A stretch of 64,000 nucleotides of DNA, taken from the IMG/VR virus record IMGVR_UViG_3300028045_000001, positions 1 through 64,000 of that record; one strand, written 5' to 3'. The translations under genes were made by a program, and so were the position numbers. Position 1 is the first letter of the stretch, and every line of letters starts with the position of its first letter. The notes under the pieces were generated by a model. That model saw only the letters and a list, made by a program, of their open reading frames with translations, ran no database searches and was not told where the DNA came from. Shown one piece after another: positions 8,101-55,656 of this stretch.

Positions 8101-8253
8101 ATGACAATTCATAATGAACTTCCAGCTAAGCTATTTACAGAAGCATTTATAATGCATACTGAAAACACCTTATCGCAATTTAAAGAGATATTGGATGCTC
8201 TAAGTGAACGAATGGATGTTGTGCAGGCAAGCATGGAAAAACCGATCAGATGA
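8101..8253 (+). CDS. 50-aa paralog of the 7824 ORF, overlapping the start of the DUF285 gene
   Basis: Strong RBS (aggagg); upstream aaaataaaacttagg shared with the 7824 gene; TGA overlaps ATG at 8250. Confidence 0.55.
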
Positions 8254-10379
8254 TCTCGGACCTTTCACATAGAATGGAATTAAATGAGGAGTATATGAAA
8301 AATCAAGAAACAGTAGTGATACCAACTTACGATAGCCAAATTTTATTGCAAACTGACATGGATGCATATAAGTTAGGATGCAAATGGGCAGTGTTAATAA
8401 TCAATAGTAGCTGCGAACTAAAGTTTGAAAACGAGATAAACCGTTCCGAAGCAGACGATCTCATATCCAATACAAAAAATATTATGCTACAAATACAAAC
8501 GACAATAGATAGTTTAGGTATACAAAAAACGATTGTACAAGACAACTCACTAATGGATGAACCAGGTATCATACGCGTAGCTCTCATAGATAAAGAAGAA
8601 GGCATCGTGGACGGAGATATCCCATTATGTATAGCGATATGCTCAGATGAAGATTTAATTGAAGCAGCCGGAATGTGGCTCACTATTGTGTATCGGTTAA
8701 AGATAGGGTGTGAGATTGATTACACTAAATCCGAAAAAGAACGACTCCCACATTTTGAATACCTTGCCACAGTACGACCTGCCAATGCGACAGACAAGGA
8801 AGATTCGACAATGCCAAGTACTTATATTCTCATCGCCCATGCTGTTGCGACTGCCCCTCGGAGTGAAGAGGAACTACGTAAGCATAAAGGTTCGTTTATA
8901 ACAAAGTGGCAAGGACAAAAGATTACCTTACCGTTAGATAAATCCGGAACATATGACTTCGAAATCCATTGGGGCGACGGTGCACACGATAAAGTCATAG
9001 GGTACGATCATAGTAGAATCTCACACACATATGCCGATGGCGAGGAGGTGCATACCATAACCATTTATGGGACTGTAGAAGGATTCGGGTTTGATTATTC
9101 ACCGGGGGCAGGCGTAGCGGATATACTCGATGTACTTCAGTGGGGAGATGTCAAGTTACATAACAACGGAGCTCAGTTTGCACATTGTACAAAGTTAAAG
9201 GGATTCAGTGCTAAGGATGTTCCGGATTTATCTGATGTTACCAATATGTGCGGTATGTTCGGTAAGGCTATTTCTTTCAACCAAGATATATCTAAATGGG
9301 ATGTAAGCAGTGTTACTAATATGGAGCAGATGTTCTGTTACGCCATAGTCTTCAATCAAAACATCTCCAATTGGGATGTGAGTAATGTTACTACTATGGC
9401 TGGCATGTTTAGAGGTGCCGCATCATTCAACCAAGATATATCCAAATGGGATGTAAGCGGTGTTACTAATATGAGGGATATGTTCCATGAGGATACTTCT
9501 TTCAATCAAGCCTTATCTAACTGGGATGTTAGTAGTGTTACCAATATGAACCGCATGTTTTATATGGCTACCTGTTTCAATCAGGAGATCTCTAAGTGGG
9601 ATGTTGGAAATGTTACCGATATGGATGGCATGTTCATGTATGCTGTATCCTTCAACCAAGATATCTCCAACTGGGATGTGAGTAGTGTTACTGGTATGGG
9701 TGCGATGTTCCAGCGAGCTTCATCCTTCGATCAAGACATATCCAAATGGGATGTTAGTAATGTTACCGATATGATGGACATGTTCCGTTGCGCCATAGTC
9801 TTTAACCAAGACATATCCAAATGGGATGTTAGTAGCGTAACTGATATGCAGGATATGTTCCATGCAGCTACATCCTTTAACCAGGATATCTCTAAGTGGG
9901 ATGTAAGCAGCGTAACTGATATGGAGGATATGTTCCATTCAGCTCCATACTTCAATCAGGATGTATCTAACTGGGACGTTAGTAGTGTTACTAATATGAA
10001 CGGCATGTTCCATGAAGCTAAGGCTTTCGATCAAGATATCTCCAAATGGAATGTCGGCAGTGTAACTGATATGCACGGGATGTTCCGAGGGGCTCTTTCC
10101 TTCGATCAAGCTATCTCTAACTGGGATGTGAGTAATGTTACCAACATGAGCGGGATGTTCTATAATGCTGTTCGTTTCGACAAATGTATATATAGCTGGG
10201 ATGTAAGCAAGGTCACTAATATGAGGTGTATGTTCTATGGGGCTACCTGTTTCAACCAGGATATTTCTGAGTGGGACGTGAGTAACGTCACTAATGTACA
10301 AAGCATAGTCGGGCTTGCTCCAAGTTTTAAGCGAAATCTCCCCAATTTTAAAGATTGCGCCAATGTGATAGTTAGATAA
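8250..10379 (+). CDS. BspA/DUF285 leucine-rich-repeat protein with PKD-like domain
   Basis: FITKW...IHWGDG domain followed by 14 full 25-aa repeats of consensus FNQDISxWDVSxVTxMxxMFxxAxS. Confidence 0.9.
9274..10323 (+). repeat. 75-bp coding tandem repeat (DUF285 units)
   Basis: Recurring ttcaa(c/t)caagatat(a/c)tc..a.tgggatgt at 75-nt period; boundaries approximate. Confidence 0.8.
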
Positions 10380-10454: not shown

Positions 10455-10509
10455 ATTTATGAAGCGCTATAAAGTTCATATAAATTTAAATACATTACAG
10501 GAGATTATT

Positions 10510-11067
10510 ATGCAATATGGATATTGTGAAAAATGTGGTCAACTAAGTACAGGCAGGTACCCTTCACGTAAGTGTATGAATGTTGATTGTAAAGGGGAGG
10601 ATGGATACGCCATAGATGAGTTATTCGGGGAATTAATTATCAGGTTACATAGCAATGGTATTGTTACTTCGAATTGTTGTTCCGGACATACTCAACTACG
10701 TGCAAGATCAATAGATACACTTTATATGCAATTTAAAGTATCAGCGGATCGTTTTGATAACACCTTTTTAAAGAGGTGTAATGAAATGGTCCCTAACTTT
10801 CCGGAATGTGACTACAACTTTGAATTATGGTGTAACAAGCAAACCGATGTCACGTACTTCAACCTTGTACTGAAATTAAAATCTAAGGAGGATTCGAAAT
10901 GGCCTACTGAGGCAACTGAACGGCAAATATACCACGTCAGTAATCTTTACAACGTATTATCTGATCCAGGGATGATGCAATTTTTATTTTCATTAACTGA
11001 CGAAGAAGAGAAGCTTAGGTACGCCAGATACAAACTATCAAAGGGCCAAATAGGGGGGCACAAATAA
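10510..11067 (+). CDS. Zn-binding CCSGH-family protein (paralog 2)
   Basis: YCEKCG...CMNVDC...YAIDELFGELIIRLHSNGIVTSNCCSGH; start reassigned to the ATG after RBS ggag. Confidence 0.65.
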   Translation: MQYGYCEKCGQLSTGRYPSRKCMNVDCKGEDGYAIDELFGELIIRLHSNGIVTSNCCSGHTQLRARSIDTLYMQFKVSADRFDNTFLKRCNEMVPNFPECDYNFELWCNKQTDVTYFNLVLKLKSKEDSKWPTEATERQIYHVSNLYNVLSDPGMMQFLFSLTDEEEKLRYARYKLSKGQIGGHK

Positions 11068-11600
11068 TGAGATGCTTTTATTGTAAGTCATGTGGGGTAG
11101 TACATCGTGCGGGGTACCATCCTACTAATTGTAAAAATATGTGTTGCGATGGGACGGTATATGAGATAGATGAGCTGTTTGCAGAATTGATTGTGAAGTT
11201 ACATGGATTGGGCATAGTCACAACCGAATGTTGTTCTGGCCATGCCCATGATGAAAAATCAATTGGGGCGATATATATTTCATTCGCAGTTAAAGGAGCG
11301 AAGACGGAATTCATCAAAAACCACGTTGTAGTCTCACTTAATAAGCAGGCACACGAAGCTTATAAATTTGAGGTCATAGAAAAGGAGGACGAGTATGAGA
11401 GCACCATTAGACTCTGCGTAAAACCAGAATTTAGTGACGTATACATCAATGATTCCCCAACCTGTACAATTTTGAATCACACTAAGTCTTTCATTGCAAT
11501 GTTACTGTATACTCCAAAAATCATAAAGATGCTGTATAGCTTAACTGGAGAGAAAGAAAAACTTAAATACGCTAGATATAGATGTAAGTTACATGCCTAA
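11067..11600 (+). CDS. Zn-binding CCSGH-family protein (paralog 3)
   Basis: FYCKSCG...YEIDELFAELIVKLHGLGIVTTECCSGH; C-terminus LT.E.EKL.YARY shared with paralog 2. Confidence 0.65.
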   Translation: MRCFYCKSCGVVHRAGYHPTNCKNMCCDGTVYEIDELFAELIVKLHGLGIVTTECCSGHAHDEKSIGAIYISFAVKGAKTEFIKNHVVVSLNKQAHEAYKFEVIEKEDEYESTIRLCVKPEFSDVYINDSPTCTILNHTKSFIAMLLYTPKIIKMLYSLTGEKEKLKYARYRCKLHA

Positions 11601-11602
11601 CT

Positions 11603-11624
11603 GTATGGGGGACACCCCCCATAC
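11603..11624 (+). terminator. intergenic hairpin
   Basis: gtatggggg/cccccatac stem after the stop codon. Confidence 0.6.
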
Positions 11625-11661
11625 TTCCACAGCTTTGATGTCTTCCAATTTTTTTCATCTA

Positions 11662-11669
11662 TATATGAC
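11662..11669 (+). promoter_or_regulatory. early promoter variant TATATGAC
   Basis: One mismatch to consensus, same T-run context, upstream of the first BTLCP gene. Confidence 0.4.
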
Positions 11670-11750
11670 TTATATGAACAACAAAGTTTCTATACCGTAC
11701 TAACGTTATCTAAATCATCTATATTTAATTTTTAAATGGAGGTCATCGAC

Positions 11751-12365
11751 ATGAAGAAGGAGTTACTGTTGGCTACAATTGCAATTGTGTGTATTTCCGG
11801 ATGTGATGTTAACCTTGATATTGGGCCTGATGAAAGCACCAGTGGAGATGTCACAAATCCATATGGCGTGCATTCTCATCGTAACGCGGCTGTTCCCAAA
11901 GCCTGGTCTAAATTCTGTGCCCGCTATAATCAACCAATTGCTTCGAAAGACTATGGAAAAAGGTTTCAGGATCTAAGGGAGATCTTTCACCCGCTATTCG
12001 ATAATTTCGATCATGTTGAAGACATAGATCATTGGGGAGTCGAAGAGCAATGGGATATCATGCCTGACGACGATCTTCGTGGGGATTGTGAGGACTTTGC
12101 ACTTACCCTAAGGGCTCGACTTATTAGAAATGGATTTCCCATGCATGATGTCCGCATTGCTACTTGTCATATATTGAGGAAAGGCAAGCCTATGCATCAC
12201 GCGGTCGCTTTGGTTGAGGTCGATAGAGGTGATGTCTATGTGGTTGATCCAAGTGGAATATATAAATTTAAAGAGTATCGAGTAGTGTCCTGGAATAAGG
12301 TATTGGATGAGAGTGGCATATATTGGGTCATGATAGATAATATCCCAGGTACAATCAAACTTTAG
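11751..12365 (+). CDS. transglutaminase-like cysteine peptidase (BTLCP/LapG-like) lipoprotein, triad intact
   Basis: Lipobox ISGC; WGVEEQW...RGDCEDFALTLR...HHAVALVE...VVD. Confidence 0.85.
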   Translation: MKKELLLATIAIVCISGCDVNLDIGPDESTSGDVTNPYGVHSHRNAAVPKAWSKFCARYNQPIASKDYGKRFQDLREIFHPLFDNFDHVEDIDHWGVEEQWDIMPDDDLRGDCEDFALTLRARLIRNGFPMHDVRIATCHILRKGKPMHHAVALVEVDRGDVYVVDPSGIYKFKEYRVVSWNKVLDESGIYWVMIDNIPGTIKL

Positions 12366-12366
12366 G

Positions 12367-12396
12367 GGTAGAGGGAGAGCATGCTCTCCCTCTACC
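12367..12396 (+). terminator. 30-bp perfect palindrome after the stop codon
   Basis: ggtagagggagagcatgctctccctctacc equals its own reverse complement. Confidence 0.7.
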
Positions 12397-12420
12397 TGAA
12401 CTCATTATTTTTTTTATTTA

Positions 12421-12428
12421 TATGTTAC
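12421..12428 (+). promoter_or_regulatory. early promoter variant TATGTTAC
   Basis: One mismatch to consensus, after palindrome and T-run. Confidence 0.4.
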
Positions 12429-12482
12429 AATCATAGTACAACGATGGTATGTGAAATTTAATTTATAGGGAGTAAAAAAAAT

Positions 12483-13520
12483 ATGGTAGCCAATATTGAA
12501 AAAATTTTAAGCACGATAGTTAGTGAATATAAATCATGGTGTCAAAAAAATAATGTTAAAGATTTTAATAATGAAGATTATAAATATTGTTTTATTGCGG
12601 ATTTTTTTAAACTTAATTCACAAGAACGACGCTTCACTGTTTTAATATCAAAGAAATGCTTAGAAGTATGTGAAGTCATACTCTATGGGGAATCTTTTGA
12701 ATATATGAAAAACGAAGAAAATTCTCTTTGGTTTTATACGGTAATAAATATGACATTCATGGAAAATTTACTTAACTGGGGTACTTCTATTCGTGTAGCA
12801 TGGTTTGAAATTGATGAGAAAGAATATTGTTTTACACATTTCACTCTTAATCTTGATATAGAATCATGGGGAGATTTTATTAAAGCGACTCGTGAATTTA
12901 CAAGAATGAGCTTAACGCCCACAGACTCAGTTGGATCTATAAATACAATTACATATGAAATGGGTTGTAGAATAGCAAAGGATATAATAAAATATTCTAA
13001 AACCAATGATTTATTATTTAAAGTAAAACAAATATTAGTGCGACTGCAGCACATAATGTTTAGCTTTAAAATAAATAAAAGATTTGTATTGACCAGCGAT
13101 AAGAACTTAAAAAATTATAATAATATAAAAATATATTTAATAGATAATACAGAACCACTTAATAGTTGTATATCGCATCTTGATCCAGATGATGTATTTA
13201 CAACGATACCACTTGACCGATTTTATTCGTTTGAAGAAGTAATTGATTCAACTACATTATGTATAAATGTATTGTCTGAAAAAGATTTAATCATTGCGTC
13301 TGGAATATATAGTTTTATTGGAAGCTGCTTATACAACGAATTTAGTATCGATTGTGTTGAAGATAGATGTATAGATGATTCTTATAAAATGCGCTTGCTG
13401 CAAAGCAAAGAAAAAAAGACACTATGTATAGAAAAGGGAGACTATGGCGAAAGGGGTCGTTTATATATAGATGATCTTGTCTATGTCACTATAGAAAATA
13501 TAGACGAAGTTAAATTTTAA
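12483..13520 (+). CDS. hypothetical protein in a visibly lower-GC segment
   Basis: N-terminal half paralogous to the next ORF (YKY.FI.D.F...KKCLEVCE.ILY..FEY.KNEEN.LW). Confidence 0.7.
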   Translation: MVANIEKILSTIVSEYKSWCQKNNVKDFNNEDYKYCFIADFFKLNSQERRFTVLISKKCLEVCEVILYGESFEYMKNEENSLWFYTVINMTFMENLLNWGTSIRVAWFEIDEKEYCFTHFTLNLDIESWGDFIKATREFTRMSLTPTDSVGSINTITYEMGCRIAKDIIKYSKTNDLLFKVKQILVRLQHIMFSFKINKRFVLTSDKNLKNYNNIKIYLIDNTEPLNSCISHLDPDDVFTTIPLDRFYSFEEVIDSTTLCINVLSEKDLIIASGIYSFIGSCLYNEFSIDCVEDRCIDDSYKMRLLQSKEKKTLCIEKGDYGERGRLYIDDLVYVTIENIDEVKF

Positions 13521-13530
13521 TCCAAGGAAA

Positions 13531-14031
13531 ATGCGTATGTCAGATAATATTAAAAAATACCTAGATGTACTAATTAAACAATATGAAGAATGGATTAAAG
13601 GTAGCGACTATTATGAGGCATGGGTTGAAGAAAATAAATATATTGAAAATTTTAATGATGTAGATTATAAATATTATTTCATTTCAGATGTTTTTGAATT
13701 TACTACATATGAAAATTACTACTCTGCATTAATGGCAAAAAAATGTCTGGAGGTATGTGAAACTATACTCTATAAGAATTTTGAATACATCAAAAATGAA
13801 GAAAATGCGCTATGGTATAACATAATAATTAATATGCCAATTTTAAATGATAAACTTAATTTAAATTCATCTATTCATGAAATACGATTTGAGATTGATG
13901 GGGGGACTAAATATGAAAGTTATTGGTTTCCATATAAATTAACTACTGAATCATGGGGAGAATTCATTAAAGCAATCCGCGAGTTTATACAAACGGAATT
14001 TTATAAACATAATGCACATATTGTAGTATAA
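13531..14031 (+). CDS. hypothetical protein, paralog of the 12483 N-terminal domain
   Basis: Shared motifs KKCLEVCE and ESWGEFIKA. Confidence 0.7.
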   Translation: MRMSDNIKKYLDVLIKQYEEWIKGSDYYEAWVEENKYIENFNDVDYKYYFISDVFEFTTYENYYSALMAKKCLEVCETILYKNFEYIKNEENALWYNIIINMPILNDKLNLNSSIHEIRFEIDGGTKYESYWFPYKLTTESWGEFIKAIREFIQTEFYKHNAHIVV

Positions 14032-14077
14032 ATGTCTTTCAATGTTTATTAGTTATATATAACTTGACTGAAAGAAG
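14031..14077 (+). repeat. 47-bp duplicated promoter cassette, copy 1
   Basis: aatgtctttcaatgtttattagttatatataacttgactgaaagaag; copy 2 at 15767-15813 differs by one base; contains TATATAAC at 14056-14063. Confidence 0.85.
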
Positions 14078-14124
14078 GAAAGTATATAACTAATAAACTT
14101 AAATACATTGGAGGACACACTATC

Positions 14125-14739
14125 ATGAAAAAGAATATCTTAAATGCAATAGTTGTAATTTTTGTAGTATTGAATATGGTTGCTTGCGATAGCTCAGCCG
14201 ATGGAGATCAATCTCGATCTGGATCTTATAACAATCAAGTATCCAGGATCAAAGCTTATGATGAGTTCTTAGAGAGAGCAGGTCACGAAGTCCCAACAGC
14301 TCCTGAAAAATCCACTGCTGATCTTCAAAGAGTTTATAATGAACTTAGAGACAACTTCACTTACATGAGCGATAAGGAACAATACAATGTAGAAGATTAT
14401 TGGACCATCATGTCAGATGACAATCTTGTTGGAGATGCCGAAGACTTTGTGTTGACTCTTCGTAAGAAACTGATGGATGATGGGTTTAGACTGGCTAATG
14501 CACGAATAGCGCGATGCTATGTCCCAAGAGAAGACAATAAGTATGACTCTAAATACGTCAGCATCAACCATACTGTGCTTCTTGTAGAAGTCGAAATGGG
14601 TAGAGTGTATGTTGTAGATTCAGATGCCCATTATGATTTTTATAACTTTCCTGTGGTAGAGTGGGCTGACATGCTTGATGAAACTGGTGACTATTGGGTC
14701 AAGTTGGATATCCCTGGAAACAGCGATCGGATGATGTAA
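14125..14739 (+). CDS. BTLCP/LapG-like lipoprotein, catalytic Cys replaced by Ala
   Basis: Lipobox MVAC; GDAEDFVLTLR in place of GDCED; NHTVLLVE...VVD. Confidence 0.8.
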   Translation: MKKNILNAIVVIFVVLNMVACDSSADGDQSRSGSYNNQVSRIKAYDEFLERAGHEVPTAPEKSTADLQRVYNELRDNFTYMSDKEQYNVEDYWTIMSDDNLVGDAEDFVLTLRKKLMDDGFRLANARIARCYVPREDNKYDSKYVSINHTVLLVEVEMGRVYVVDSDAHYDFYNFPVVEWADMLDETGDYWVKLDIPGNSDRMM

Positions 14740-14743
14740 TAAC

Positions 14744-14781
14744 TATACAGGTACTGGGCGATATCGCCCAGTACCTGTATA
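14744..14781 (+). terminator. 38-bp perfect palindrome
   Basis: tatacaggtactgggcgat|atcgcccagtacctgtata. Confidence 0.7.
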
Positions 14782-14841
14782 CAAATAAACATTATTTTTT
14801 TACCATGTACTGATGTGCCGTCTTTCAATAAACCTTGGTTA

Positions 14842-14849
14842 TATATAAC
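14842..14849 (+). promoter_or_regulatory. early promoter variant TATATAAC
   Basis: Same ggttatatataactt context as the 47-bp cassette. Confidence 0.5.
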
Positions 14850-14904
14850 TTATATGAGGAATAAAAAATTATACAATCAATTTAACTACATTGGAGGACG
14901 GACT

Positions 14905-15702
14905 ATGAAAAAGAATATATTAATTGCGATATCTACACTATTCATGATGTTTACTATGGTTGCTTGTGATGGGAGCAGTGGTGGGGGTGGTGCCTCCGGC
15001 GATGACCTATCGGATTCCGGCGAGCTCACCGGAGATCTTGGCACAGACATCATCATAGATCAATATGTTGGGAACACTACTCCGATTATATCCGTTGGTC
15101 AACCAACTGGACGAGTGCGGGCGTATGATGATTTCTTAAGAAGGGATGGGCAGGATGTTCCAGTGGCTCCGAATAAAAATTCGTTTGATCTGAAAAAAGC
15201 GCATAAGGCATTCAGAAAAAAATTCACCTACATGCACGACATAGATAAATACGGTGTAGATGAATATTGGACTATTATGCCTGATGATGATCTTGTTGGG
15301 GATTGCGAAGACTTTGCTCTAACCTTTCGTGAGAAATTAATTGAAGCTGGATTTACTCCACCAAACGTTAGGATAGCAACCTGCGTAATGCCAAATGGAT
15401 ATAGAGATAATAGCCATCAGACTTATCATGCTGTACTCATCGTAGAAGTTTTTTGGGGTGAGGTGTATGTAGTAGATTCCAAGAGATGTTTGAAGTTCGA
15501 TAGCTTTAAAGTAATAGAGTGGGATAAAGTACTTGATGAAACTGGCAACTATTGGGTCAAGATGCGCATACCTAAGGATAAAGGAAATGGCGATCCAGGT
15601 AATGATAATAAAATTGAAGAAGAGGAAACCGAGAAGGAGGACATGGAAGACGACGAACGAAAAGATGGTCCAATAGGCTATTATGATAGACACTATGCAT
15701 AA
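14905..15702 (+). CDS. BTLCP/LapG-like lipoprotein, triad intact, acidic C-terminal tail
   Basis: Lipobox MVAC; YGVDEYW...GDCEDFALTFR...YHAVLIVE...VVD; start at the ATG after ggagg. Confidence 0.85.
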   Translation: MKKNILIAISTLFMMFTMVACDGSSGGGGASGDDLSDSGELTGDLGTDIIIDQYVGNTTPIISVGQPTGRVRAYDDFLRRDGQDVPVAPNKNSFDLKKAHKAFRKKFTYMHDIDKYGVDEYWTIMPDDDLVGDCEDFALTFREKLIEAGFTPPNVRIATCVMPNGYRDNSHQTYHAVLIVEVFWGEVYVVDSKRCLKFDSFKVIEWDKVLDETGNYWVKMRIPKDKGNGDPGNDNKIEEEETEKEDMEDDERKDGPIGYYDRHYA

Positions 15703-15709
15703 TTCAATC

Positions 15710-15749
15710 CTTACATGTTGTTGACCACACTTGGTCAACAACATGTAAG
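15710..15749 (+). terminator. intergenic hairpin
   Basis: 18-bp stem, 4-nt loop, followed by T-run. Confidence 0.75.
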
Positions 15750-15766
15750 AATCATTTATTTTTTTT

Positions 15767-15813
15767 AATGTCTTTCAATGTTTATTGGTTATATATAACT
15801 TGACTGAAAGAAG
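15767..15813 (+). repeat. 47-bp duplicated promoter cassette, copy 2
   Basis: Matches 14031-14077 with one mismatch; TATATAAC at 15792-15799. Confidence 0.85.
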
Positions 15814-15852
15814 TAAAATATAAAACTAATTTAACTATATTGGAGGATGACA

Positions 15853-16470
15853 ATGAAAACAAATTTTATCAATACAATGATAATAATTACTGTAATGTTC
15901 GCTACAGCTGCATGTAAAGAAGATGCATCTATTAGTGATTATATGAATAGCGACGCCACCACAGCAGTTGAATCCATGGGTCGACCAACAAGAAGGGTTA
16001 GGGCTTATGATGACTTCTTAAAAAGAACTGGTAAGAAAGTTAATGCCATTCCAAAAAAGAACTCATTCGATCTTATACGAGTATACGACGAGCTCAGAGA
16101 TAATTTTACTTATATGCGCGACATGGAACAATACGGTGTGGAAGAATACTGGACTGTTATGTCGGACGATGATCCTGTTGGGGATTGTGAAGACTTTGCT
16201 CTAACTCTTCGTGCACGATTGATAGCCGATGGGTTCTCTCCAGTGAATGTCAGGATTGCAACTTGTTACGTACCAACCTCGTATACTAAATCCGATGATC
16301 CAGAAAAGCGACTGAATCATGCAGTTCTTATAGTTGAAATTAATAATGGCCAAGTGTATGTAGTTGATAATGGAGACCACTATAAGTTTCATGAATTTGA
16401 GGTAATTAACTGGGACCGCATGCTTGATGAGACTGGAAATTATTGGGTCAATATGAACGTGTCCAGCTAA
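15853..16470 (+). CDS. BTLCP/LapG-like lipoprotein, triad intact
   Basis: Lipobox TAAC; YGVEEYW...GDCEDFALTLR...NHAVLIVE...VVD. Confidence 0.85.
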   Translation: MKTNFINTMIIITVMFATAACKEDASISDYMNSDATTAVESMGRPTRRVRAYDDFLKRTGKKVNAIPKKNSFDLIRVYDELRDNFTYMRDMEQYGVEEYWTVMSDDDPVGDCEDFALTLRARLIADGFSPVNVRIATCYVPTSYTKSDDPEKRLNHAVLIVEINNGQVYVVDNGDHYKFHEFEVINWDRMLDETGNYWVNMNVSS

Positions 16471-16483
16471 AGATTAGACCTAA

Positions 16484-16512
16484 TGTAGGGTGGGCAATAT
16501 GCCCACCCTGTA
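16484..16512 (+). terminator. intergenic hairpin
   Basis: agggtgggca/tgcccaccct stem followed by T-run. Confidence 0.7.
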
Positions 16513-16554
16513 GTGTATTTTTTTATATTTCTATAAAACTAATTGGAGGATGTT

Positions 16555-17157
16555 ATGAAAGGGATCTTTATAAACGTGACCCTAATTGGCCTACTGCTAC
16601 TTGGACTCGCTTGCGAAGAAACAGAAGTTACCCATTCAAAAATAGGTAAGCATAATAGATGGAGGCATGCCGGGTACGATGACTTTCTTAAGACACGTGG
16701 GCAAAAAATTTTCGATAACCCAAAGAAGTTCCTTGTCGATTTTCGAAAGATATACGACGAGCTTAGAGATAATTTCACGTATATGGGTGACGAAGAACAG
16801 TATGGCAAAGAAGACTATTGGACCATTATGCCTGACGACAATCTGGTTGGGGATGATGAGGATTTTGTGCTAACCCTCAGAGAAAGATTAGTTAGTAGTG
16901 GTTTTAATAAAGCTAACGTAAGGATTGCCAGATGTTATAAACCGAGGGAGGATAATAAATATGATTCGGAGTACCTTATGTTCAATCATGTTGTGGCCCT
17001 TGTTGAAATTGAAATGGGAAGGTTGCTTGTAGCAGATACAGATGACTACTACAACTTCTATCGTTTTCCAGTAGTCAGTTGGTACGACATGCTTGATGAG
17101 ACTGGCGACTATTGGGTCAAGTTGGATATGCCAGGAAATTCGGACAAAATGGAATAA
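16555..17157 (+). CDS. BTLCP/LapG-like lipoprotein, catalytic Cys replaced by Asp
   Basis: Lipobox GLAC; GDDEDFVLTLR; shares REDNKYDS and the PGNSD.M tail with the 14125 ORF. Confidence 0.8.
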   Translation: MKGIFINVTLIGLLLLGLACEETEVTHSKIGKHNRWRHAGYDDFLKTRGQKIFDNPKKFLVDFRKIYDELRDNFTYMGDEEQYGKEDYWTIMPDDNLVGDDEDFVLTLRERLVSSGFNKANVRIARCYKPREDNKYDSEYLMFNHVVALVEIEMGRLLVADTDDYYNFYRFPVVSWYDMLDETGDYWVKLDMPGNSDKME

Positions 17158-17159
17158 CT

Positions 17160-17187
17160 ACAACGCCTGGACATGTCCAGGCGTTGT
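17160..17187 (+). terminator. 28-bp perfect palindrome
   Basis: acaacgcctggaca|tgtccaggcgttgt. Confidence 0.65.
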
Positions 17188-17219
17188 GTAACTTATTTAA
17201 ATACATTGGAGGACATGTC

Positions 17220-17861
17220 ATGAAAAATAAAATTATCAGTATGATGTTAATGGGTGCAATTGTCCTTAATGTAGTTGCATGTGTAGAAGTGACAACTACC
17301 ACAACTACTACAGCTACTGGCGAACCTATTGTAATGGGCGACTACGATATCTCAGGTAATGAAACCCCACTCGAATACATTGATCGACCTTCAAGGAGAG
17401 TTCGATTTTATGATGATTTTTTGAGAAGGACTAATAAGAAAGTTCCCTTAAGTCCTAAAAAGAATGTTGGTGATCTTAAAAAAATATATAAGAAACTTAG
17501 GTCTACTTTTACCTATGTGTCTGACATAAATCAATATGGTGTGGATGATCATTGGGTAGTTATGCCGGACAATAATCGCACAGGGGACTGTGAGGATTTT
17601 GCTTTGACTCTTCGTGAAAAGTTAATTGCAGATGGGTTTGAAAAATCCAACGTGAGATTCGCCACGTGTTACACTCCTAAAAAATATGAGGAAGATGCAA
17701 AGAACAATTACCATGCGGTCCTTATTGTTGAGTTATTTTGGGGAAAAGTGTATGTTGTGGATTATAAGTATTGTGTAGAGTTTCGTAAATTCCCTGTTGA
17801 GAAATGGGATCATGTATTAGATGAGACGGGGAAGTATTGGATCCGGATGGAGATTCGTTAA
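17220..17861 (+). CDS. BTLCP/LapG-like lipoprotein, triad intact
   Basis: Lipobox VVAC, Thr run, YGVDDHW...GDCEDFALTLR...YHAVLIVELFWG..VVD. Confidence 0.85.
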   Translation: MKNKIISMMLMGAIVLNVVACVEVTTTTTTTATGEPIVMGDYDISGNETPLEYIDRPSRRVRFYDDFLRRTNKKVPLSPKKNVGDLKKIYKKLRSTFTYVSDINQYGVDDHWVVMPDNNRTGDCEDFALTLREKLIADGFEKSNVRFATCYTPKKYEEDAKNNYHAVLIVELFWGKVYVVDYKYCVEFRKFPVEKWDHVLDETGKYWIRMEIR

Positions 17862-17906
17862 TTGTTAACGAAATAAATAATAAATTTTAAACGGGGGGTG
17901 TTTAGT

Positions 17907-18962
17907 ATGGCAGAAGAAGCGTATGAAGAAGAGCTGCATTTATTAGCCCTTATGAAAAAACTATTCACGATGGGCGTTGTTTGTTGCAGTGTTGTTTGGG
18001 CAGGATTTAATGTTTGCAGCACTGTCTGGGATTGGGGCAAGGCAAAGTATGAGACACACAAGCAACAATCCCATACTGAGAAACGGTATCTACGACGAAT
18101 GAAATCACTCGTTGCCAGCTACAATGCTCTCGAATCACAAGTTGCCAAAAACGATAGACGATTAACTGAAATTGAAGGAACGATGACCAGTAAATCCGTT
18201 GGACGAACTTCGAACTCATCTAAGGTCAAACTGTGGCCAAGTAATACTATCAGATACCACATTGATGAGAAAATTGAGGATTGGGATTTAACCCAAATGA
18301 TCGATGAGGCATTTGAAAAAATAAGTGAGAATACTTGTTTAAAATTTCATAAGCTTCCGATACTTTGGAAGGATAGGAGTAGCTTTCTGCTAATCACATT
18401 GACGGAGAGTGACGAGGACTATCCTAATGCGACATTGGGCTATTCGCAAAGAAATCAAGTTGAATTGAGTATGTATTCTGAATTTGATACTGTATACCAT
18501 GAGTTTCTACATGCACTTGGATTGCCCCATGAACACCAAAGACCTGATGCTGAAATAGTCGTTAATTTTGATAACCTTGAAGGTGATAGTACTTGGTACA
18601 GAAAATATCCAAAAGATATGTACCCATACCCTTTGGATAAATTCATCTTTGATGCTGACTCCATTATGGCATATTGCTCATATAGCGAGACAACACAACG
18701 AGGGAAGAAAACTATTAATTACGGGAGAGCGCAGGGGTCACTCAGTCCCACTCCAATTGACTACATGAAGATCAATTGTATGTACTGTGGCTCTAATCCT
18801 CCACCGAAAGAGACCCAGTGGTACATGGCACTACTGAACAGGTATTCCCATAAAGGCTCACCAAAGAAGTTGAAGGTGGTCATAGAAGGGGAAGATGGCG
18901 AACGTGATGTACTTGTCACTTTAGATGAAATGGCATCTTTTGGTAATAAAAAAGAATACTGA
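17907..18962 (+). CDS. astacin-family (M12A) zinc metalloprotease with N-terminal hydrophobic segment
   Basis: HEFLHALGLPHEHQRPD signature, Met-turn DSIMAY, WP..TIRY, conserved Cys. Confidence 0.85.
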   Translation: MAEEAYEEELHLLALMKKLFTMGVVCCSVVWAGFNVCSTVWDWGKAKYETHKQQSHTEKRYLRRMKSLVASYNALESQVAKNDRRLTEIEGTMTSKSVGRTSNSSKVKLWPSNTIRYHIDEKIEDWDLTQMIDEAFEKISENTCLKFHKLPILWKDRSSFLLITLTESDEDYPNATLGYSQRNQVELSMYSEFDTVYHEFLHALGLPHEHQRPDAEIVVNFDNLEGDSTWYRKYPKDMYPYPLDKFIFDADSIMAYCSYSETTQRGKKTINYGRAQGSLSPTPIDYMKINCMYCGSNPPPKETQWYMALLNRYSHKGSPKKLKVVIEGEDGERDVLVTLDEMASFGNKKEY

Positions 18963-19085
18963 TAGTTACATGACCGGGAAAACAGATCCTCTTGGCGGCT
19001 GGTATAGTGAAGGTATAATGGGATTTGTGAGAATAGAAGACATGATAGATTTTAGTAGGTAAATTAAAACGAAAGGAGACGTAAA

Positions 19086-20084
19086 ATGAAAAAAGGTAAA
19101 ACAACAATCAAGGGCAGTAATGCAAAAATGGCTACATTGGCAATTTGTGGGATAGTTAACATCATTTTTATTTGGACTTTTTGTAGTGCAACGGTGACTG
19201 TTGCAGAGGATGTCGCTGTAACGCACGAGGTACAAGAAGAACAAGTTCCATTTTCAATGGAAGAGCATCGTGTACGATGTCGAAAAGCTACCACTTTAGG
19301 TAGAGAGCACCTTCTGTCAAAGCCCCACACTGTGCAAGGATGGCCCGATAAGGTCATTCGATACTATATCGATAAAGACAGATTGACGGATCCATATGTT
19401 GTTGAAGAAGTAATAAATGTATTCGACGCCATAGCAGAAACCACATGTTTAGACTTCATCCGACTTGATGGACCAGAATCATACAATGTGCAGGTTAAGG
19501 TATTATTGGTAACATCCACTACAAATGGGAGGTACCCCACTTCAACATTAGGATACAATGAGATCGCGAATATAATTAGATTGCGCAATGATTCTCAAAT
19601 ATGGACTATCTATCATATGGTTTTACATGCGTTGGGTTTGACTCATGAGAACCAGCGACCCGACGCAGAGCTTCTTGTTGATATGGATAACATACAAGAA
19701 GAGTTTAAATGTAATTTTGAGAAGCTCCCTGCAAGTTGCTTTCTGTACCCAGTAGATAAGTTCATTTTTGAGGTAAGTTCCATTATGTCGTATAGGCCAT
19801 ACTCTGCCTGTAAAGATTGTAGCAAAAGAACTATCGACTACGGGCGCGAGAAGGAGGGACAACGTGAACCGACATCTATTGATTATATGAAATTGGAGTA
19901 CATTTACTGTGGACTTAATCCGCCACCTAAAGAAACCCAATGGTATTTGTCTTTTCTACATAGGTACCATAATCACTCAAAGCCTGAGGATTTGACGGTT
20001 ACAATAAAAAGTAACGGTATAACTTCATACGTTAATTTTGGTGGCATGGCGTCGCCACTCGGCGATCATGTGAAACCGGAGTAA
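19086..20084 (+). CDS. astacin-like protein lacking the catalytic Glu
   Basis: HMVLHALGLTHENQRPD (E to M), SSIMSY; shares YCG.NPPPKETQWY with the upstream paralog; N-terminal TM segment. Confidence 0.8.
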   Translation: MKKGKTTIKGSNAKMATLAICGIVNIIFIWTFCSATVTVAEDVAVTHEVQEEQVPFSMEEHRVRCRKATTLGREHLLSKPHTVQGWPDKVIRYYIDKDRLTDPYVVEEVINVFDAIAETTCLDFIRLDGPESYNVQVKVLLVTSTTNGRYPTSTLGYNEIANIIRLRNDSQIWTIYHMVLHALGLTHENQRPDAELLVDMDNIQEEFKCNFEKLPASCFLYPVDKFIFEVSSIMSYRPYSACKDCSKRTIDYGREKEGQREPTSIDYMKLEYIYCGLNPPPKETQWYLSFLHRYHNHSKPEDLTVTIKSNGITSYVNFGGMASPLGDHVKPE

Positions 20085-20180: not shown

Positions 20181-21470
20181 ATGAAAACAGACACTACCGC
20201 GTTCGTAACAAAGTGGGAAGGGAAACGAGTCACGTTACCATTACACAAAAATGGAACATTTGATTTTGTAGTAGACTGGGGCGACGGTGTAGCAGATCAT
20301 ATAACTGAACATGATCAAAAAGAAATTATACACGATTATGAGGATGGCCAGTTAACGCATGAAGTAGCTATATCTGGCACCATAGAAGGGTTTGGATTTA
20401 TTGTCGATGACCCACTTAGTTACACTGCCATAAATTCGCTCCCCTTTGGATCTTTTCCATTAAATAACACCGACGGCTTTGCGCAGCAGTCCAGGACCAT
20501 TGCATTAGTAAAGAAATTCACGAACTGGTGTATGGGGTTTGTCACATCCAAGCAAGCCATAGTGTCAGGACCAAAGGAAGGAAGCCAATTTATGGACTTT
20601 ATTAAGTCAGCCCAAGCTATGGCCCCAAAACCGAGCGACTGCATATTACTCGATGTCTTACAGTGGGGGGCCGTTAAGTTACACAATGGAGGGTGTCAAT
20701 TTACAGATTGTACAAAGTTAAAAGGCTTCAGTGCTAAGGATGTTCCAGATTTATCTAATGTTACTAATATGATGGGCATGTTCCTCAGAGCTACATCGTT
20801 CAATCAAGACTTATCTAAATGGGATGTGGGTAGTGTTACTGATATGAAAGATATGTTCTGTGGCGCTACTTCCTTTAACCAAAATATCTCTAAATGGGAT
20901 GTGAGTAGTGTTACTGATATGAGCGGTGCGTTCCTCAGGGCTGCATCTTTCAACCAAGACATATCTAATTGGGACGTTAGCAGTGTCACTAATATGAAAG
21001 ATATGTTCTTGGGTGCCGAAGTCTTCGATCAAGACATATCTAACTGGGATGTTGGCAAGGTTACTGATATGGCGAATATGTTTAATGGCGCTACATTATT
21101 CAATCAACCCATCTCTAACTGGAATGTTAACAGCGTCACCGATACAGCTGGGATGTTCTATGAAGCTTCATCCTTTAACCAAGACATATCCAATTGGGAC
21201 GTGGGTAGGGTAACTGACATGAGGTTTATGTTCCACAATGCCACTGCCTTCAATCAAGATATTTCTAAGTGGAATGTTGGCAGTGTTAGGAATATGGATT
21301 GTATGTTCATGTCGGCTGTATCCTTCAACCAAGATATCTCTAACTGGGATGTGAGTAGCGTAACTGCTATGGGAGGTATGTTCTATGAAGCCAGCTCATT
21401 CGATCAGAATATATCCGATTGGGATGTAATCAACACGACCAAAGGAAGTCCCATTAAACAAACAAATTAA
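20181..21470 (+). CDS. BspA/DUF285 leucine-rich-repeat protein
   Basis: FVTKWEG...VDWGDG domain, about 70-aa insertion, 8 full plus 1 partial 25-aa repeats. Confidence 0.9.
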   Translation: MKTDTTAFVTKWEGKRVTLPLHKNGTFDFVVDWGDGVADHITEHDQKEIIHDYEDGQLTHEVAISGTIEGFGFIVDDPLSYTAINSLPFGSFPLNNTDGFAQQSRTIALVKKFTNWCMGFVTSKQAIVSGPKEGSQFMDFIKSAQAMAPKPSDCILLDVLQWGAVKLHNGGCQFTDCTKLKGFSAKDVPDLSNVTNMMGMFLRATSFNQDLSKWDVGSVTDMKDMFCGATSFNQNISKWDVSSVTDMSGAFLRAASFNQDISNWDVSSVTNMKDMFLGAEVFDQDISNWDVGKVTDMANMFNGATLFNQPISNWNVNSVTDTAGMFYEASSFNQDISNWDVGRVTDMRFMFHNATAFNQDISKWNVGSVRNMDCMFMSAVSFNQDISNWDVSSVTAMGGMFYEASSFDQNISDWDVINTTKGSPIKQTN

Positions 21471-24665: not shown

Positions 24666-25136
24666 ATGTACAATCAAGACTGTAAAGAGGTAGCTGGCGA
24701 TATAATACAATTGGCCATAGAAGGGAGATTTGATGTCATTGTTCACGGTTGTAATTGTTTCTGTACCATGGGGGCAGGACTTGCAAAAGCAATTAGAGCA
24801 GAATTTCCAGAAGCTTATAAAGCGGATCTCAATACAAAGAAAGGAGATGCATCAAAACTCGGTACCTACACCAAAGCAACGGTAGATAGAAATGGAAACA
24901 CTATAACTATAATCAATGCTTACATCCAGTTTGAGTATGGATGGGTTGGAACTATGGCTCAGTACGAAGCCATACGAAACGTTTGTATAAAATTAAAATC
25001 TGAATTTTCTGGGAAACGATTTGGATTCCCTTTAATTGGGGCAGGATTAGCTGGGGGCAACTGGAAAATCATCGAGATTATTTTGTGTAAGGAATTACAA
25101 GGTGAAGACTATACTGTAGTTAAGTTGCCAACTTAA
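24666..25136 (+). CDS. macro-domain (ADP-ribose binding/hydrolase) protein
   Basis: GDII...IVHGCNCFCTMGAGLAKAIRAEFPEA...NAYIQ...FPLIGAGLAGGNW. Confidence 0.9.
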   Translation: MYNQDCKEVAGDIIQLAIEGRFDVIVHGCNCFCTMGAGLAKAIRAEFPEAYKADLNTKKGDASKLGTYTKATVDRNGNTITIINAYIQFEYGWVGTMAQYEAIRNVCIKLKSEFSGKRFGFPLIGAGLAGGNWKIIEIILCKELQGEDYTVVKLPT

Positions 25137-55581: not shown

Positions 55582-55656
55582 GTTATCAACCCCATAATTA
55601 AATTAATGTTATATAACCACCCATTTAAATTATGTTACTACGAAAAGGTAATTGGA

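What the first reader, a model, noticed from the sequence alone, without database searches (positions are those of the whole stretch)
11751..17861. Phage-encoded array of six LapG-like cysteine-protease lipoproteins
Seen: six paralogs (11751, 14125, 14905, 15853, 16555, 17220), each with a lipoprotein signal ending in a lipobox Cys and a G.xEDF motif preceded by (Y/W)xxxxxW. Four keep the full Cys-His-Asp triad. Four sit behind TATAT(A/G)AC early-promoter variants. Established: BTLCP proteins such as Pseudomonas LapG are Ca-dependent periplasmic proteases that release the LapA-type adhesin and are normally held inactive by LapD under high c-di-GMP. Inference: the phage places diversified, membrane-tethered LapG mimics in the host periplasm early in infection. 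They could detach the infected cell from the biofilm, remodel surface receptors (superinfection exclusion), or cut envelope immune sensors. I do not know of a described phage LapG array.
Basis: partly seen in the sequence, partly recalled or inferred. Interest (0 to 1): 0.85.

Follow-up and report, generated by a model that had tools for sequence, protein, structure and literature searches.

The report
Six lipoprotein BTLCP peptidases, jumbo phage
A giant phiKZ-like phage from a metagenome carries six neighbouring genes for membrane-tethered enzymes of the LapG protein fold (four look active, two have lost the catalytic cysteine). They probably cut or bind proteins of the host's cell envelope, but they are not LapG copies and their targets are unknown.

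Summary
Six + strand paralogs (11751-17861) all score above Pfam's gathering threshold for PF06035 (BTLCP, Peptidase_C93). All have a lipobox signal. A, C, D and F keep Cys-His-Asp; B and E have Ala or Asp at the Cys position. Predicted structures match only the solved LapG structures at E <= 1e-3.

The "LapG mimic" reading is only partly supported:
- The LapG equivalog model gives at most 22 bits against a cut-off of 320.
- Solved LapGs score far below about 1,500 other relatives.
- The window holds no LapD, type 1 secretion or adhesin gene.
- The host is unknown.

A tree shows two origins. Copy A belongs to a clade of single-copy lipoprotein BTLCPs found on unrelated phage contigs. B-F are an expansion in this lineage, and the Cys was lost once, on the B/E stem.

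A-D each sit behind an extended AT-rich motif ending in TATAT(A/G)AC. Seven other intergenic sites in the window share it, which fits a phiKZ-type virion-RNA-polymerase (early) promoter.

Phage BTLCP genes are already reported (the most frequent auxiliary gene in river single-virus genomes), but I found no other array. Most likely these are exported envelope peptidases and pseudo-peptidases with several host targets.

Rating: new variant of a known kind.

The parts
11751..12365 (+). Paralog A. Lipoprotein BTLCP, 204 aa, Cys-His-Asp intact. The copy of the type shared with other phages.
   Evidence: PF06035 at 71 bits. Lipobox ISGC, Cys at residue 18. AF2 model with core pLDDT about 85-95; the LapG structures are the top PDB hits. 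Groups 100/99 with single-copy phage lipoproteins P0007-P0013.
14125..14739 (+). Paralog B. Lipoprotein BTLCP, 204 aa, nucleophile Cys replaced by Ala (GDAEDF); His and Asp kept.
   Evidence: PF06035 at 46 bits. Alignment. AF2 pLDDT 89.3 and pTM 0.77, so the fold is predicted to be kept; LapG structures are the top hits. Sister of E.
14905..15702 (+). Paralog C. Lipoprotein BTLCP, 265 aa, triad intact. 55-aa Gly/Ser/Asp-rich linker and an acidic C-terminal tail.
   Evidence: PF06035 at 54 bits. Linker and tail. Sister of F.
15853..16470 (+). Paralog D. Lipoprotein BTLCP, 205 aa, triad intact.
   Evidence: PF06035 at 58 bits. Lipobox TAAC followed by K-E-D. The identical protein is seen in three other datasets.
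16555..17157 (+). Paralog E. Lipoprotein BTLCP, 200 aa, nucleophile Cys replaced by Asp (GDDEDF). No promoter motif of its own.
   Evidence: PF06035 at 40 bits. Alignment. 58% identical to B.
17220..17861 (+). Paralog F. Lipoprotein BTLCP, 213 aa, triad intact, poly-Thr linker. No promoter motif of its own, and no hairpin before the next gene.
   Evidence: PF06035 at 52 bits..
11640..11669 (+). Promoter-like element upstream of A (GTCTTCCAAT, 12 nt, TATATGAC).
14034..14063 (+). Promoter-like element upstream of B (GTCTTTCAAT, 12 nt, TATATAAC). A second TATATAAC lies at 14083-14090.
14820..14849 (+). Promoter-like element upstream of C.
15770..15799 (+). Promoter-like element upstream of D.
12367..12396 (+). 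Perfect 15-bp-stem hairpin 2 nt after the stop of A.
14744..14781 (+). Perfect 19-bp-stem hairpin after the stop of B.
15707..15752 (+). Terminator-like hairpin after the stop of C.
16484..16512 (+). Terminator-like hairpin after the stop of D.
17159..17188 (+). Terminator-like hairpin after the stop of E.
17907..18962 (+). Adjacent membrane-anchored astacin-like metallopeptidase with an intact HEFLH..GL.HE zinc motif. Probably part of the same module of exported peptidases.
   Evidence: PF01400 at 67 bits. Hydrophobic N-terminal segment in the translation. Start as in the JGI gene call.
19086..20084 (+). Second astacin-like protein with an N-terminal signal or anchor. The catalytic Glu is replaced by Met (HMVLH).
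   Evidence: PF01400 at 68 bits. Translation. 43% identical to the first astacin.

Best explanation
The six genes encode small proteins that the host's Sec, Lgt and LspA machinery exports and lipid-anchors. Each hangs on a disordered linker of 23-55 residues and carries a BTLCP (Peptidase_C93, transglutaminase-like) domain into the host cell envelope.

A, C, D and F are competent, probably calcium-dependent, cysteine peptidases. B and E keep the fold, the calcium-site residues, the His and the Asp, but lack the nucleophile. They most likely act as non-cleaving binders (decoys, competitors or partners).

Copy A is a gene type that many unrelated phages carry singly. B-F arose by duplication within this phage lineage, probably including duplication of a two-gene unit (B-C and E-F), and then diverged. 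I take this to mean several different host targets.

A-D are separate transcription units, each with its own phage promoter motif and its own terminator hairpin. By analogy with phiKZ-type phages they are probably transcribed early by the virion RNA polymerase.

The mechanism I commit to: from the periplasmic side, the enzymes clip host envelope or surface-anchored proteins (adhesins, receptors or other exposed proteins). This changes the surface of the infected cell, by shedding adhesins or by removing or blocking receptors. The two adjacent exported astacin-like proteins are likely part of the same module.

Shown here: family, fold, residues, signals, copy history, motif enrichment. Inferred: export and lipidation, activity, timing, targets and benefit to the phage.
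For: - Family: all six exceed the PF06035 gathering score.
- Residues: invariant D-x-E around the nucleophile, invariant His and Asp. D and E at these positions are the calcium-site residues needed for activity in DvhG and LapG (PMC13090378).
- Fold: AF2 models of A (core pLDDT 85-95) and of Cys-less B (pLDDT 89.3) find only the LapG structures at E <= 1e-3, all with probability 1.00.
- Export: lipobox-like signal in 6 of 6, and strong GGAGG ribosome-binding sites. The segment after the lipobox is low-confidence, consistent with disorder.
- Selection: paralogs are 35-58% identical. Where dS could be estimated it is 1.5-2.8, with dN/dS 0.19-0.40; in 8 of 15 pairs, including B/E, dS was too saturated to estimate. 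B and E keep every other invariant position and B has a confident model, so they are maintained genes rather than decaying ones.
- History: B-F form one clade (99/96). A lies in a separate clade (100/99) with P0007-P0013. Four of those relatives sit on phage-like contigs: a methyltransferase next to many small ORFs; primase, helicase and exonuclease; ERF, SSB, TerL and portal; ThyX and radical SAM.
- Promoter: 13 of 18 + strand motif sites are intergenic. An extended motif is shared by A-D and seven other intergenic sites. Virion-RNA-polymerase promoters of phiKZ-related phages are extended AT-rich conserved sequences (PMC5312081).
- Units: hairpins directly follow A, B, C, D and E.
- Precedent for a membrane-bound BTLCP: DvhG of D. 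vulgaris (PMC13090378).
- The phage is real and circulating: the region is at least 99.9% identical in three other datasets.
Against: - No substrate, host or expression data exist.
- No signal-peptide or lipoprotein predictor was run, and three of six lipoboxes miss the strict PROSITE core at position -4.
- Similarity to the only solved relatives is modest (TM about 0.5, 17-22% identity).
- BTLCP domains could in principle catalyse transamidation or deamidation rather than proteolysis (discussed in PMC4241560).
- E and F lack the promoter motif, so their timing may differ.
- Many phage BTLCP relatives are short and have no signal peptide, so the family's role in phages need not lie in the envelope in general.
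- If the host were Gram-positive or a Bacteroidota member, 'periplasm' would be the wrong compartment. The strong Shine-Dalgarno use and the nearest cultured phages (hosts Vibrio, Burkholderia, Pseudomonas) only weakly favour a proteobacterial host.
Confidence: 0.6

Rival explanations
1. True LapG mimicry. The active copies cut the [T/A/P]AAG di-alanine site of LapA-type type-1-secreted giant adhesins, bypassing LapD and c-di-GMP control, and so release the infected cell or its debris from the biofilm. The Cys-less copies could occupy LapD and thereby free the host's own LapG.
For: - The only structural matches at E <= 1e-3 are LapG structures, and the only PDB sequence hits are LapGs.
- The calcium-site D-x-E and the triad are conserved.
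- LapG-type specificity is conserved across bacterial classes despite about 33% identity (PMC13090378).
- One host can have two or more LapG-controlled adhesins (PMC6890996, PMC13090378).
Against: - The LapG equivalog model gives at most 22 bits against a cut-off of 320.
- Solved LapGs rank far below about 1,500 other BTLCP representatives.
- LapG structures are the only BTLCPs in the PDB, so the structural 'best hit' says fold, not function.
- The proteins are lipid-anchored rather than soluble and LapD-sequestered.
- Six diverged copies are more than the one to three adhesins known per Lap system.
- The nearest cellular relatives found are from Desulfobacteraceae and Rhizobiales, not gammaproteobacterial LapGs, although that scan used a motif pattern typical of this subfamily.
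- The host is unknown.
Confidence: 0.2
2. Superinfection exclusion or receptor masking, in the manner of early phage lipoproteins (T5 Llp and Cor-type proteins; from my own knowledge). The copies bind (B, E) or clip (A, C, D, F) outer-membrane receptors, so that further phages cannot adsorb and progeny are not lost on cell debris. The array tracks several receptors or receptor variants.
For: Lipoprotein signals, probable early promoters and separate transcription units. Diversified paralogs including non-catalytic binders. The single-copy A-type gene is spread across unrelated phages, as expected of a general phage-benefit gene.
Against: No homology to any known exclusion lipoprotein was seen. 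PHROG hits are only to a 'peptidase' family and to families of unknown function. A protease is not needed for masking. No receptor or host is known.
Confidence: 0.2
3. HvyA-like control of capsule or surface polysaccharide. The proteins inactivate a periplasmic component of polysaccharide export, so the infected cell stops making capsule.
For: HvyA is a periplasmic BTLCP whose triad is needed to block capsulation and which sets phage sensitivity in Caulobacter (PMC4241560). A Caulobacter phage (CcrPW) encodes a 'transglutaminase' that is among the best viral structural matches (TM 0.69 on its own length). The motif-based genome scan returned mostly Rhizobiales and other Alphaproteobacteria, where HvyA-type BTLCPs are common (PMC4241560).
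Against: No HvyA sequence could be fetched for a direct comparison, so the relationship is untested. HvyA has a plain Sec signal without lipidation. The benefit to a lytic phage after entry is unclear. Six copies are hard to explain with one export machine.
Confidence: 0.1
4. Cell-wall or lysis function. The domains cut peptide bonds in peptidoglycan or in wall-to-outer-membrane tethers, as the transglutaminase-fold pseudomurein endoisopeptidases of methanogen phages do.
For: PeiP and the psiM2 endoisopeptidase appear as weak structural matches (E 0.04-0.06). Lipoprotein anchoring is used by outer-membrane spanin subunits (my own knowledge).
Against: The matches are far weaker than those to LapG. 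The promoter motif is of the putative early class. Six copies, two of them inactive, are not what lysis cassettes look like. No holin or endolysin is adjacent.
Confidence: 0.05

Closest known systems
LapG (P. fluorescens, L. pneumophila, V. cholerae): periplasmic BTLCP that releases LapA-type adhesins
   Same: PF06035 family and fold. Cys-His-Asp triad in four copies. D-C-E calcium-site motif. Conserved W-x5-W before the active site. Location outside the cytoplasm.
   Different: Not an equivalog: at most 22 bits against a cut-off of 320. About 17-22% identity. Lipid-anchored instead of soluble. Encoded by a phage in six copies, two without the Cys. No LapD, type 1 secretion or adhesin genes nearby. 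Substrate unknown.
DvhG (Desulfovibrio vulgaris): membrane-anchored LapG-type BTLCP (PMC13090378)
   Same: A BTLCP held at the membrane by its N-terminus through a disordered segment. Triad and calcium site conserved. Relatives in Desulfobacterota resemble the nearest cellular relative found here, P0014 from a Desulfobacteraceae genome bin.
   Different: DvhG has a transmembrane helix rather than a lipobox. It is encoded in an adhesin, type 1 secretion and DvhD operon, and it is single-copy.
HvyA (Caulobacter crescentus): BTLCP that prevents capsulation (PMC4241560)
   Same: BTLCP domain acting in the envelope, with a link to phage susceptibility.
   Different: Plain Sec signal, cell-cycle regulated, embedded in a capsule locus.
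Phage-borne BTLCP 'auxiliary' genes (river single-virus genomes, PMC11283719; Vibrio phage 'peptidase' genes; Caulobacter phage CcrPW 'transglutaminase')
   Same: The same Pfam family on phage genomes, apparently moving between phage lineages. Copy A clusters with single-copy lipoprotein versions on unrelated phage contigs. A viral cluster of 265 members combines a lipoprotein attachment motif with a transglutaminase-like domain.
   Different: Those are single genes. The Vibrio phage versions are 131-138 aa and have no signal peptide. None has a tested function. Here there are six copies, with pseudo-enzyme members, in a phiKZ-like jumbo phage.
Early phage lipoproteins that block receptors (T5 Llp, Cor; from my own knowledge)
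   Same: Small, probably early, lipid-anchored envelope proteins made by a lytic phage.
   Different: No sequence or fold relationship. Those are binders without an enzyme fold.

Membership tests
BTLCP / Peptidase_C93 (PF06035) | Match to the family HMM above the curated gathering score | tested here: met
   All six score 40.4-71.3 bits against a cut-off of 27.
BTLCP / Peptidase_C93 (PF06035) | Cys-His-Asp catalytic triad | tested here: inconclusive
   Met in A, C, D and F. Not met in B (Ala) or E (Asp) at the Cys position. His and Asp are invariant in all six. So there are four likely enzymes and two pseudo-enzymes.
BTLCP / Peptidase_C93 (PF06035) | Transglutaminase-like cysteine peptidase fold | tested here: met
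   AF2 models of A and B. The only PDB matches at E <= 1e-3 are LapG structures, all with probability 1.00 and TM 0.45-0.56.
BTLCP / Peptidase_C93 (PF06035) | N-terminal export signal (acts outside the cytoplasm) | tested here: met
   Basic N-terminus, hydrophobic core and lipobox Cys at residue 18-21 in 6 of 6 by pattern. No dedicated predictor and no experiment.
LapG (NCBIfam NF045674 equivalog; Lap system protease) | Score at or above the equivalog cut-off (320 bits) | tested here: not met
   12.6-21.9 bits for A, C, D and F. No match listed for B or E.
LapG (NCBIfam NF045674 equivalog; Lap system protease) | [quoted passage not shown] | tested here: met
   D and E flank the nucleophile position in all six. 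The motif is as defined in PMC13090378. Calcium binding itself was not tested.
LapG (NCBIfam NF045674 equivalog; Lap system protease) | Soluble periplasmic protein held by the c-di-GMP receptor LapD through a Trp-binding pocket | tested here: not met
   The lipobox predicts membrane anchoring.
LapG (NCBIfam NF045674 equivalog; Lap system protease) | Gene linked to LapD, a type 1 secretion system and an RTX-type adhesin | tested here: not met
   Neighbours are DUF285 proteins, astacins and proteins without a Pfam match. None of the ORFs scanned has a GGDEF, EAL, HAMP, ABC, TolC or RTX domain. The host genome is unknown.
LapG (NCBIfam NF045674 equivalog; Lap system protease) | Calcium-dependent cleavage at the di-alanine of [T/A/P]AAG after an adhesin retention module | not testable with these tools
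   Needs purified protein and reporter substrates.
HvyA-type BTLCP | Close sequence relationship to HvyA or SMc00998, and a location in or action on a capsule export locus | not tested
The context here is a phage genome.
phiKZ-type virion-RNA-polymerase (early) promoter | Extended, highly conserved AT-rich element recurring upstream of genes | tested here: met
   13 of 18 + strand TATAT[ATG]AC sites are intergenic. A shared extended motif, (C/T)(A/T)AT then 11-12 nt then TATATNAC, occurs at 11 intergenic sites including A-D. The 13-mer is enriched: 25 matches against 7.3 expected.
phiKZ-type virion-RNA-polymerase (early) promoter | Transcription start a few nt downstream, and transcripts appearing early without new protein synthesis | not testable with these tools
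   Needs RNA data from an infection.

The most novel reading that the evidence does not exclude
The array, together with the two adjacent exported astacin-like genes, is an 'envelope protease island'. A jumbo phage sends a diversified set of lipid-anchored cysteine peptidases, metallopeptidases and their catalytically dead paralogs into the host envelope early in infection. There they dismantle or blind several surface proteins at once (adhesins, receptors, perhaps envelope-based defence sensors). The dead copies would work as substrate traps or as decoys for host regulators such as LapD-like receptors. I know of no description of such a phage early function.
Probability: 0.25. Interest if true: 0.75.

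Novelty: new variant of a known kind. Interest (0 to 1): 0.55.

Why it matters
BTLCP genes are reported as the most frequent auxiliary gene in river single-virus genomes (PMC11283719), yet no phage BTLCP has a tested function. This locus offers a natural series: one ancestral-type copy, three further active copies and two nucleophile-less copies, all lipid-anchored. With it one can ask what phage BTLCPs cut, and why a phage keeps pseudo-enzymes.

If the targets are giant adhesins or receptors, this would be a way for phages to control host attachment, biofilm release or superinfection from inside the periplasm, independent of the host's c-di-GMP control. It also shows that a 'LapG fold' hit is not enough to call a LapG function.

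Tried and rejected
- Close DNA relatives: megablast of 11000-19000 against 50,697 phage records found nothing.
- Other phages with the gene: tblastn with copy D found only short partial matches in 31 Vibrio phage records, and none in the roughly 300 cultured phiKZ-like phages that match this phage's polymerases.
- Other arrays: scans of IMG/VR, GTDB genomes and JGI metagenomes with family patterns gave 174 loci. Only this phage has three or more copies. These scans depend on short motif patterns and can miss divergent arrays.
- Host identification failed. There are no tRNAs. No paper mentions the sample or run ids. Astacin 1 has no relative but its own paralog in 5.8 billion proteins. DUF285 relatives are mostly viral. 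The nearest cultured phages are only 25-32% identical.
- A Bacteroidota host with surface-exposed lipoproteins: I considered this because acidic residues follow the lipobox Cys. I set it aside, though not firmly, because 33 of 54 large ORFs, and all six paralogs, have strong Shine-Dalgarno sites.
- Rfam: no RNA family in the window.
- A literature search for the phiKZ octamer TATATTAC returned only noise.
- A stricter lipoprotein regular expression over all ORFs recovered only A and C and no other gene, so it was too strict to be informative.
- One paper (PMC3416269, the LapG structure) is not held, so the full list of calcium ligands could not be checked.
- Chance or pseudogene explanations are rejected on the HMM scores, the dN/dS estimates below 0.4 where dS could be measured, and the high-confidence model of the Cys-less copy.

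Full report
**1. What the window is**

The window is the first 64 kb of a 239,960-bp viral contig (IMGVR_UViG_3300028045_000001, also Ga0233414_10000002). It encodes several proteins typical of phiKZ-like jumbo phages:
- a split RNA polymerase beta subunit (phrog_2962, 58855-60078);
- a divergent family B DNA polymerase (phrog_2927);
- a homolog of the phiKZ087 virion protein;
- an SNF2 helicase.

Identity to cultured relatives is only 25-32% at the protein level. Their hosts are Vibrio, Burkholderia, Xanthomonas and Pseudomonas. So this is a distant, uncultured member of the phiKZ-like jumbo phages, and its host is unknown. The region that holds the finding recurs at 99.9% identity or more in three other public datasets, so it is not an assembly artefact.

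**2. The observation**

All six match PF06035 (Peptidase_C93, BTLCP) above the gathering score, at 40-71 bits against a cut-off of 27. An HMM scan of all six reading frames finds exactly six copies in the window.

The alignment shows:
- an invariant G-D-x-E-D-F, where x is Cys in A, C, D and F, Ala in B and Asp in E;
- an invariant His and an invariant Asp at the spacing expected of the family's triad (Cys to His 37 residues, His to Asp 16 residues; in HvyA the spacings are 34 and 15, PMC4241560);
- the (Y/W)-x5-W motif before the active site.

Each protein begins with M-K, a hydrophobic stretch and a lipobox-like ending with Cys at residue 18-21. Only three fit the strict PROSITE core; the other three deviate at position -4. 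After the Cys comes a linker of 23-55 residues that is rich in Gly, Ser, Thr, Asp and Glu. The models give it low confidence.

**3. Fold**

An AF2 model of A, built from the six paralogs alone, has a core pLDDT of about 85-95. A model of the Cys-less B, built from a 58-sequence alignment, reaches mean pLDDT 89.3 and pTM 0.77. For both, the only PDB matches at E <= 1e-3 are the LapG structures 4u65_E, 4fgo, 4fgp and 4fgq, with probability 1.00, TM about 0.45-0.56 and 17-22% identity. These are the only solved BTLCP structures that turned up, so the match establishes the fold and nothing more specific.

**4. Are they LapG?**

No, not by the tests I could run:
- NCBI's LapG equivalog model gives 12-22 bits to A, C, D and F against a cut-off of 320, and lists no match for B or E.
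- A profile of the six scores the solved LapGs at 19-22 bits. The same profile finds 1,492 cluster representatives at E <= 0.001 among 1.84 billion proteins.
- LapG is soluble and is held by LapD. These proteins carry a lipobox.
- LapG genes sit with lapD, a type 1 secretion system and an adhesin (PMC6890996). Here the neighbours are DUF285 repeat proteins, two astacins and proteins with no Pfam match.

What they do share with LapG and DvhG is the Asp and Glu flanking the nucleophile. Mutation of these residues abolishes calcium-dependent activity in DvhG (PMC13090378). The family also has a second proven role. HvyA of Caulobacter is a periplasmic BTLCP that blocks capsulation and so sets phage sensitivity (PMC4241560). 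A BTLCP hit therefore does not by itself imply adhesin release.

**5. Relatives and history**

The nearest relatives outside this phage, P0007-P0013 (E 1e-39 to 1e-22), are also small lipobox proteins. Four of them sit on contigs that look like unrelated phages:
- a run of small ORFs with a DNA methyltransferase;
- primase, helicase, PAPS reductase and exonuclease;
- ERF, SSB, HNH, terminase, portal and prohead protease;
- ThyX, radical SAM and DnaJ among many small ORFs.

P0014 lies in a cellular-looking contig of a Desulfobacteraceae genome bin.

In a maximum-likelihood tree of 100 sequences, B-F form one clade (support 99/96) with the shape ((C,F),(D,(B,E))). A falls in a separate clade (100/99) with P0007-P0013, and the two clades join at 94/96. 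So A represents a gene type that circulates singly among phages, while B-F are an expansion within this lineage. The nucleophile was lost once, on the B/E stem.

The gene order is B-C-D-E-F, with B sister to E and C sister to F. This fits duplication of a two-gene unit, which is an inference. The copies are old. Where dS could be estimated it is 1.5-2.8 and dN/dS is 0.19-0.40; in 8 of 15 pairs, including B/E, dS was too saturated to estimate. B and E keep all other invariant residues. One outside relative (P0012) has also lost the Cys.

**6. Is this known in phages?**

Partly.
- BTLCP was the most frequently detected auxiliary gene in river single-virus genomes and appeared to move between viral clusters (PMC11283719).
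- PHROGs has a 'peptidase' family that the six copies hit weakly.
- An automatic protein atlas holds a 265-member viral cluster that combines a lipoprotein attachment motif with a transglutaminase-like domain.
- Caulobacter phage CcrPW has a 'transglutaminase' of similar predicted structure.
- Some Vibrio phages carry 131-138-residue versions without any signal peptide.

None of these has a tested function. The literature searches found no study of a phage LapG or BTLCP mechanism, and no described array. Across 174 fetched loci from viral, genome and metagenome collections, only this phage has three or more copies.

**7. Expression signals**

A, B, C and D each have, 48-67 nt before the ATG, an element of the form GTCTT(T/C)CAAT, 12 nt, TATAT(A/G)AC. 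On the + strand, 13 of 18 TATAT[ATG]AC sites are intergenic, in a window that is about 89% coding. A 13-mer version is enriched at 25 matches against 7.3 expected. Seven other intergenic sites (4668, 10447, 21553, 51518, 54206, 57496, 62138) share the extended pattern, mostly ending in TATATTAC.

Virion-RNA-polymerase (early) promoters of phiKZ-related phages are described as extended, highly conserved AT-rich elements (AR9: AAATATATATTAT; PMC5312081). 'Early' is therefore a reasonable inference, but it has not been shown.

Perfect or near-perfect hairpins follow the stops of A, B, C, D and E. These genes look like separate units. E and F have no motif of their own, and F runs on into the first astacin gene without a hairpin.

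**8. Surroundings**

Directly downstream lie two astacin-family genes with N-terminal membrane anchors. The first keeps the HExxH..G..HE motif. The second has HMVLH, so its catalytic Glu is lost. Neither has a relative in 50,697 phage records, nor in the 5.8-billion-protein collection beyond its own paralog.

Eight consecutive genes thus encode envelope-directed peptidase-fold proteins, three of them apparently inactive. A low-GC (30%) segment with two paralogous ORFs of unknown function separates A from B-F.

**9. Explanation**

The best-supported reading is that these are exported, lipid-anchored BTLCP peptidases and pseudo-peptidases that act on host envelope proteins. Their diversification points to several targets. 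I commit to clipping or binding of surface-anchored host proteins from the periplasmic side (confidence 0.6 for the whole statement; about 0.8 for the 'exported BTLCP-fold lipoproteins' part).

Within that frame the specific outcomes remain open:
- LapG-like adhesin release, about 0.2;
- receptor removal or masking for superinfection exclusion, about 0.2;
- HvyA-like capsule control, about 0.1;
- a wall or lysis role, about 0.05.

The host's identity and a substrate screen would decide between them.

**10. Verdict**

The BTLCP assignment is supported. The 'LapG mimic' label is not supported as membership and remains one of several possible modes of action. Phage BTLCPs are known, but the tandem six-copy lipoprotein array with pseudo-enzyme members in a jumbo phage was not found elsewhere. 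Rating: new variant of a known kind, interest 0.55.

Noticed in passing
window 17907-18962 and 19086-20084 (+): Two membrane-anchored astacin (M12A) homologs directly follow the array. The first has an intact HEFLH zinc motif. The second has HMVLH, so the catalytic Glu is lost. There is no tblastn match in 50,697 phage records, and no relative other than each other in the 5.8-billion-protein collection.
   Followed up: partly
window 8250-10379, 20181-21470, 62864-63955 (+): Three DUF285 / BspA-like leucine-rich-repeat proteins. The two whose N-termini I read (8250 and 20181) have no signal peptide. The second and third share a stretch at 73% nucleotide identity. Nearest atlas clusters are mostly viral.
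   Followed up: partly
window 10459-11067 and 11067-11600 (+): Two adjacent paralogs just upstream of copy A. They have Cys-rich N-termini and a shared D-E-L-F..E-L-I..L-H..G-I-V-T..C-C-S-G-H block. No Pfam or PHROG match.
   Followed up: no
window 12483-13520 and 13531-14031 (+): A low-GC (about 30%) segment between copy A and copies B-F. It holds two paralogous ORFs of unknown function (phrog_18399) and looks like a later insertion into the array.
   Followed up: no
window 4668, 10447, 21553, 51518, 54206, 57496, 62138 (+): Further intergenic copies of the extended promoter-like motif, mostly ending in TATATTAC. They could be used to define this phage's putative early regulon.
   Followed up: partly
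window 14051-14064, 14838-14849, 15788-15799, 55608-55617: At the B, C and D promoters, and at one other site, the motif is part of the palindrome GTTATATAAC (or AGTTATATATAACT), so it is read on both strands. The meaning is unknown.
   Followed up: no
window 43196-45010 (-): A 604-aa protein with a weak match to a PHROG labelled 'chaperonin groEL' (E 1.6e-21). Its size and the phiKZ-like context raise the question whether it is the phage-nucleus shell protein. Not examined.
   Followed up: no
window 24666-25136 and 25362-26045 (+): A macro-domain protein and an HD-domain protein a few kb downstream of the protease genes. These are possible nucleotide-signal or ADP-ribose-related functions.
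   Followed up: no
P0012 (metagenomic relative; contig not looked up): A single-copy relative in the clade of copy A has also lost the catalytic Cys (GDTNDF) and the His. Nucleophile-less versions therefore arise repeatedly in this phage-borne family.
   Followed up: no
L175:2971-3363 (Vibrio phage K479), L176:2983-3396 (Vibrio phage vB_VcorM_GR11A): Cultured Vibrio phages encode 131-138-aa BTLCP cores with GDCED(F/Y) but no signal peptide. They are presumably cytoplasmic, so phage BTLCPs fall into at least two classes by location.
   Followed up: partly
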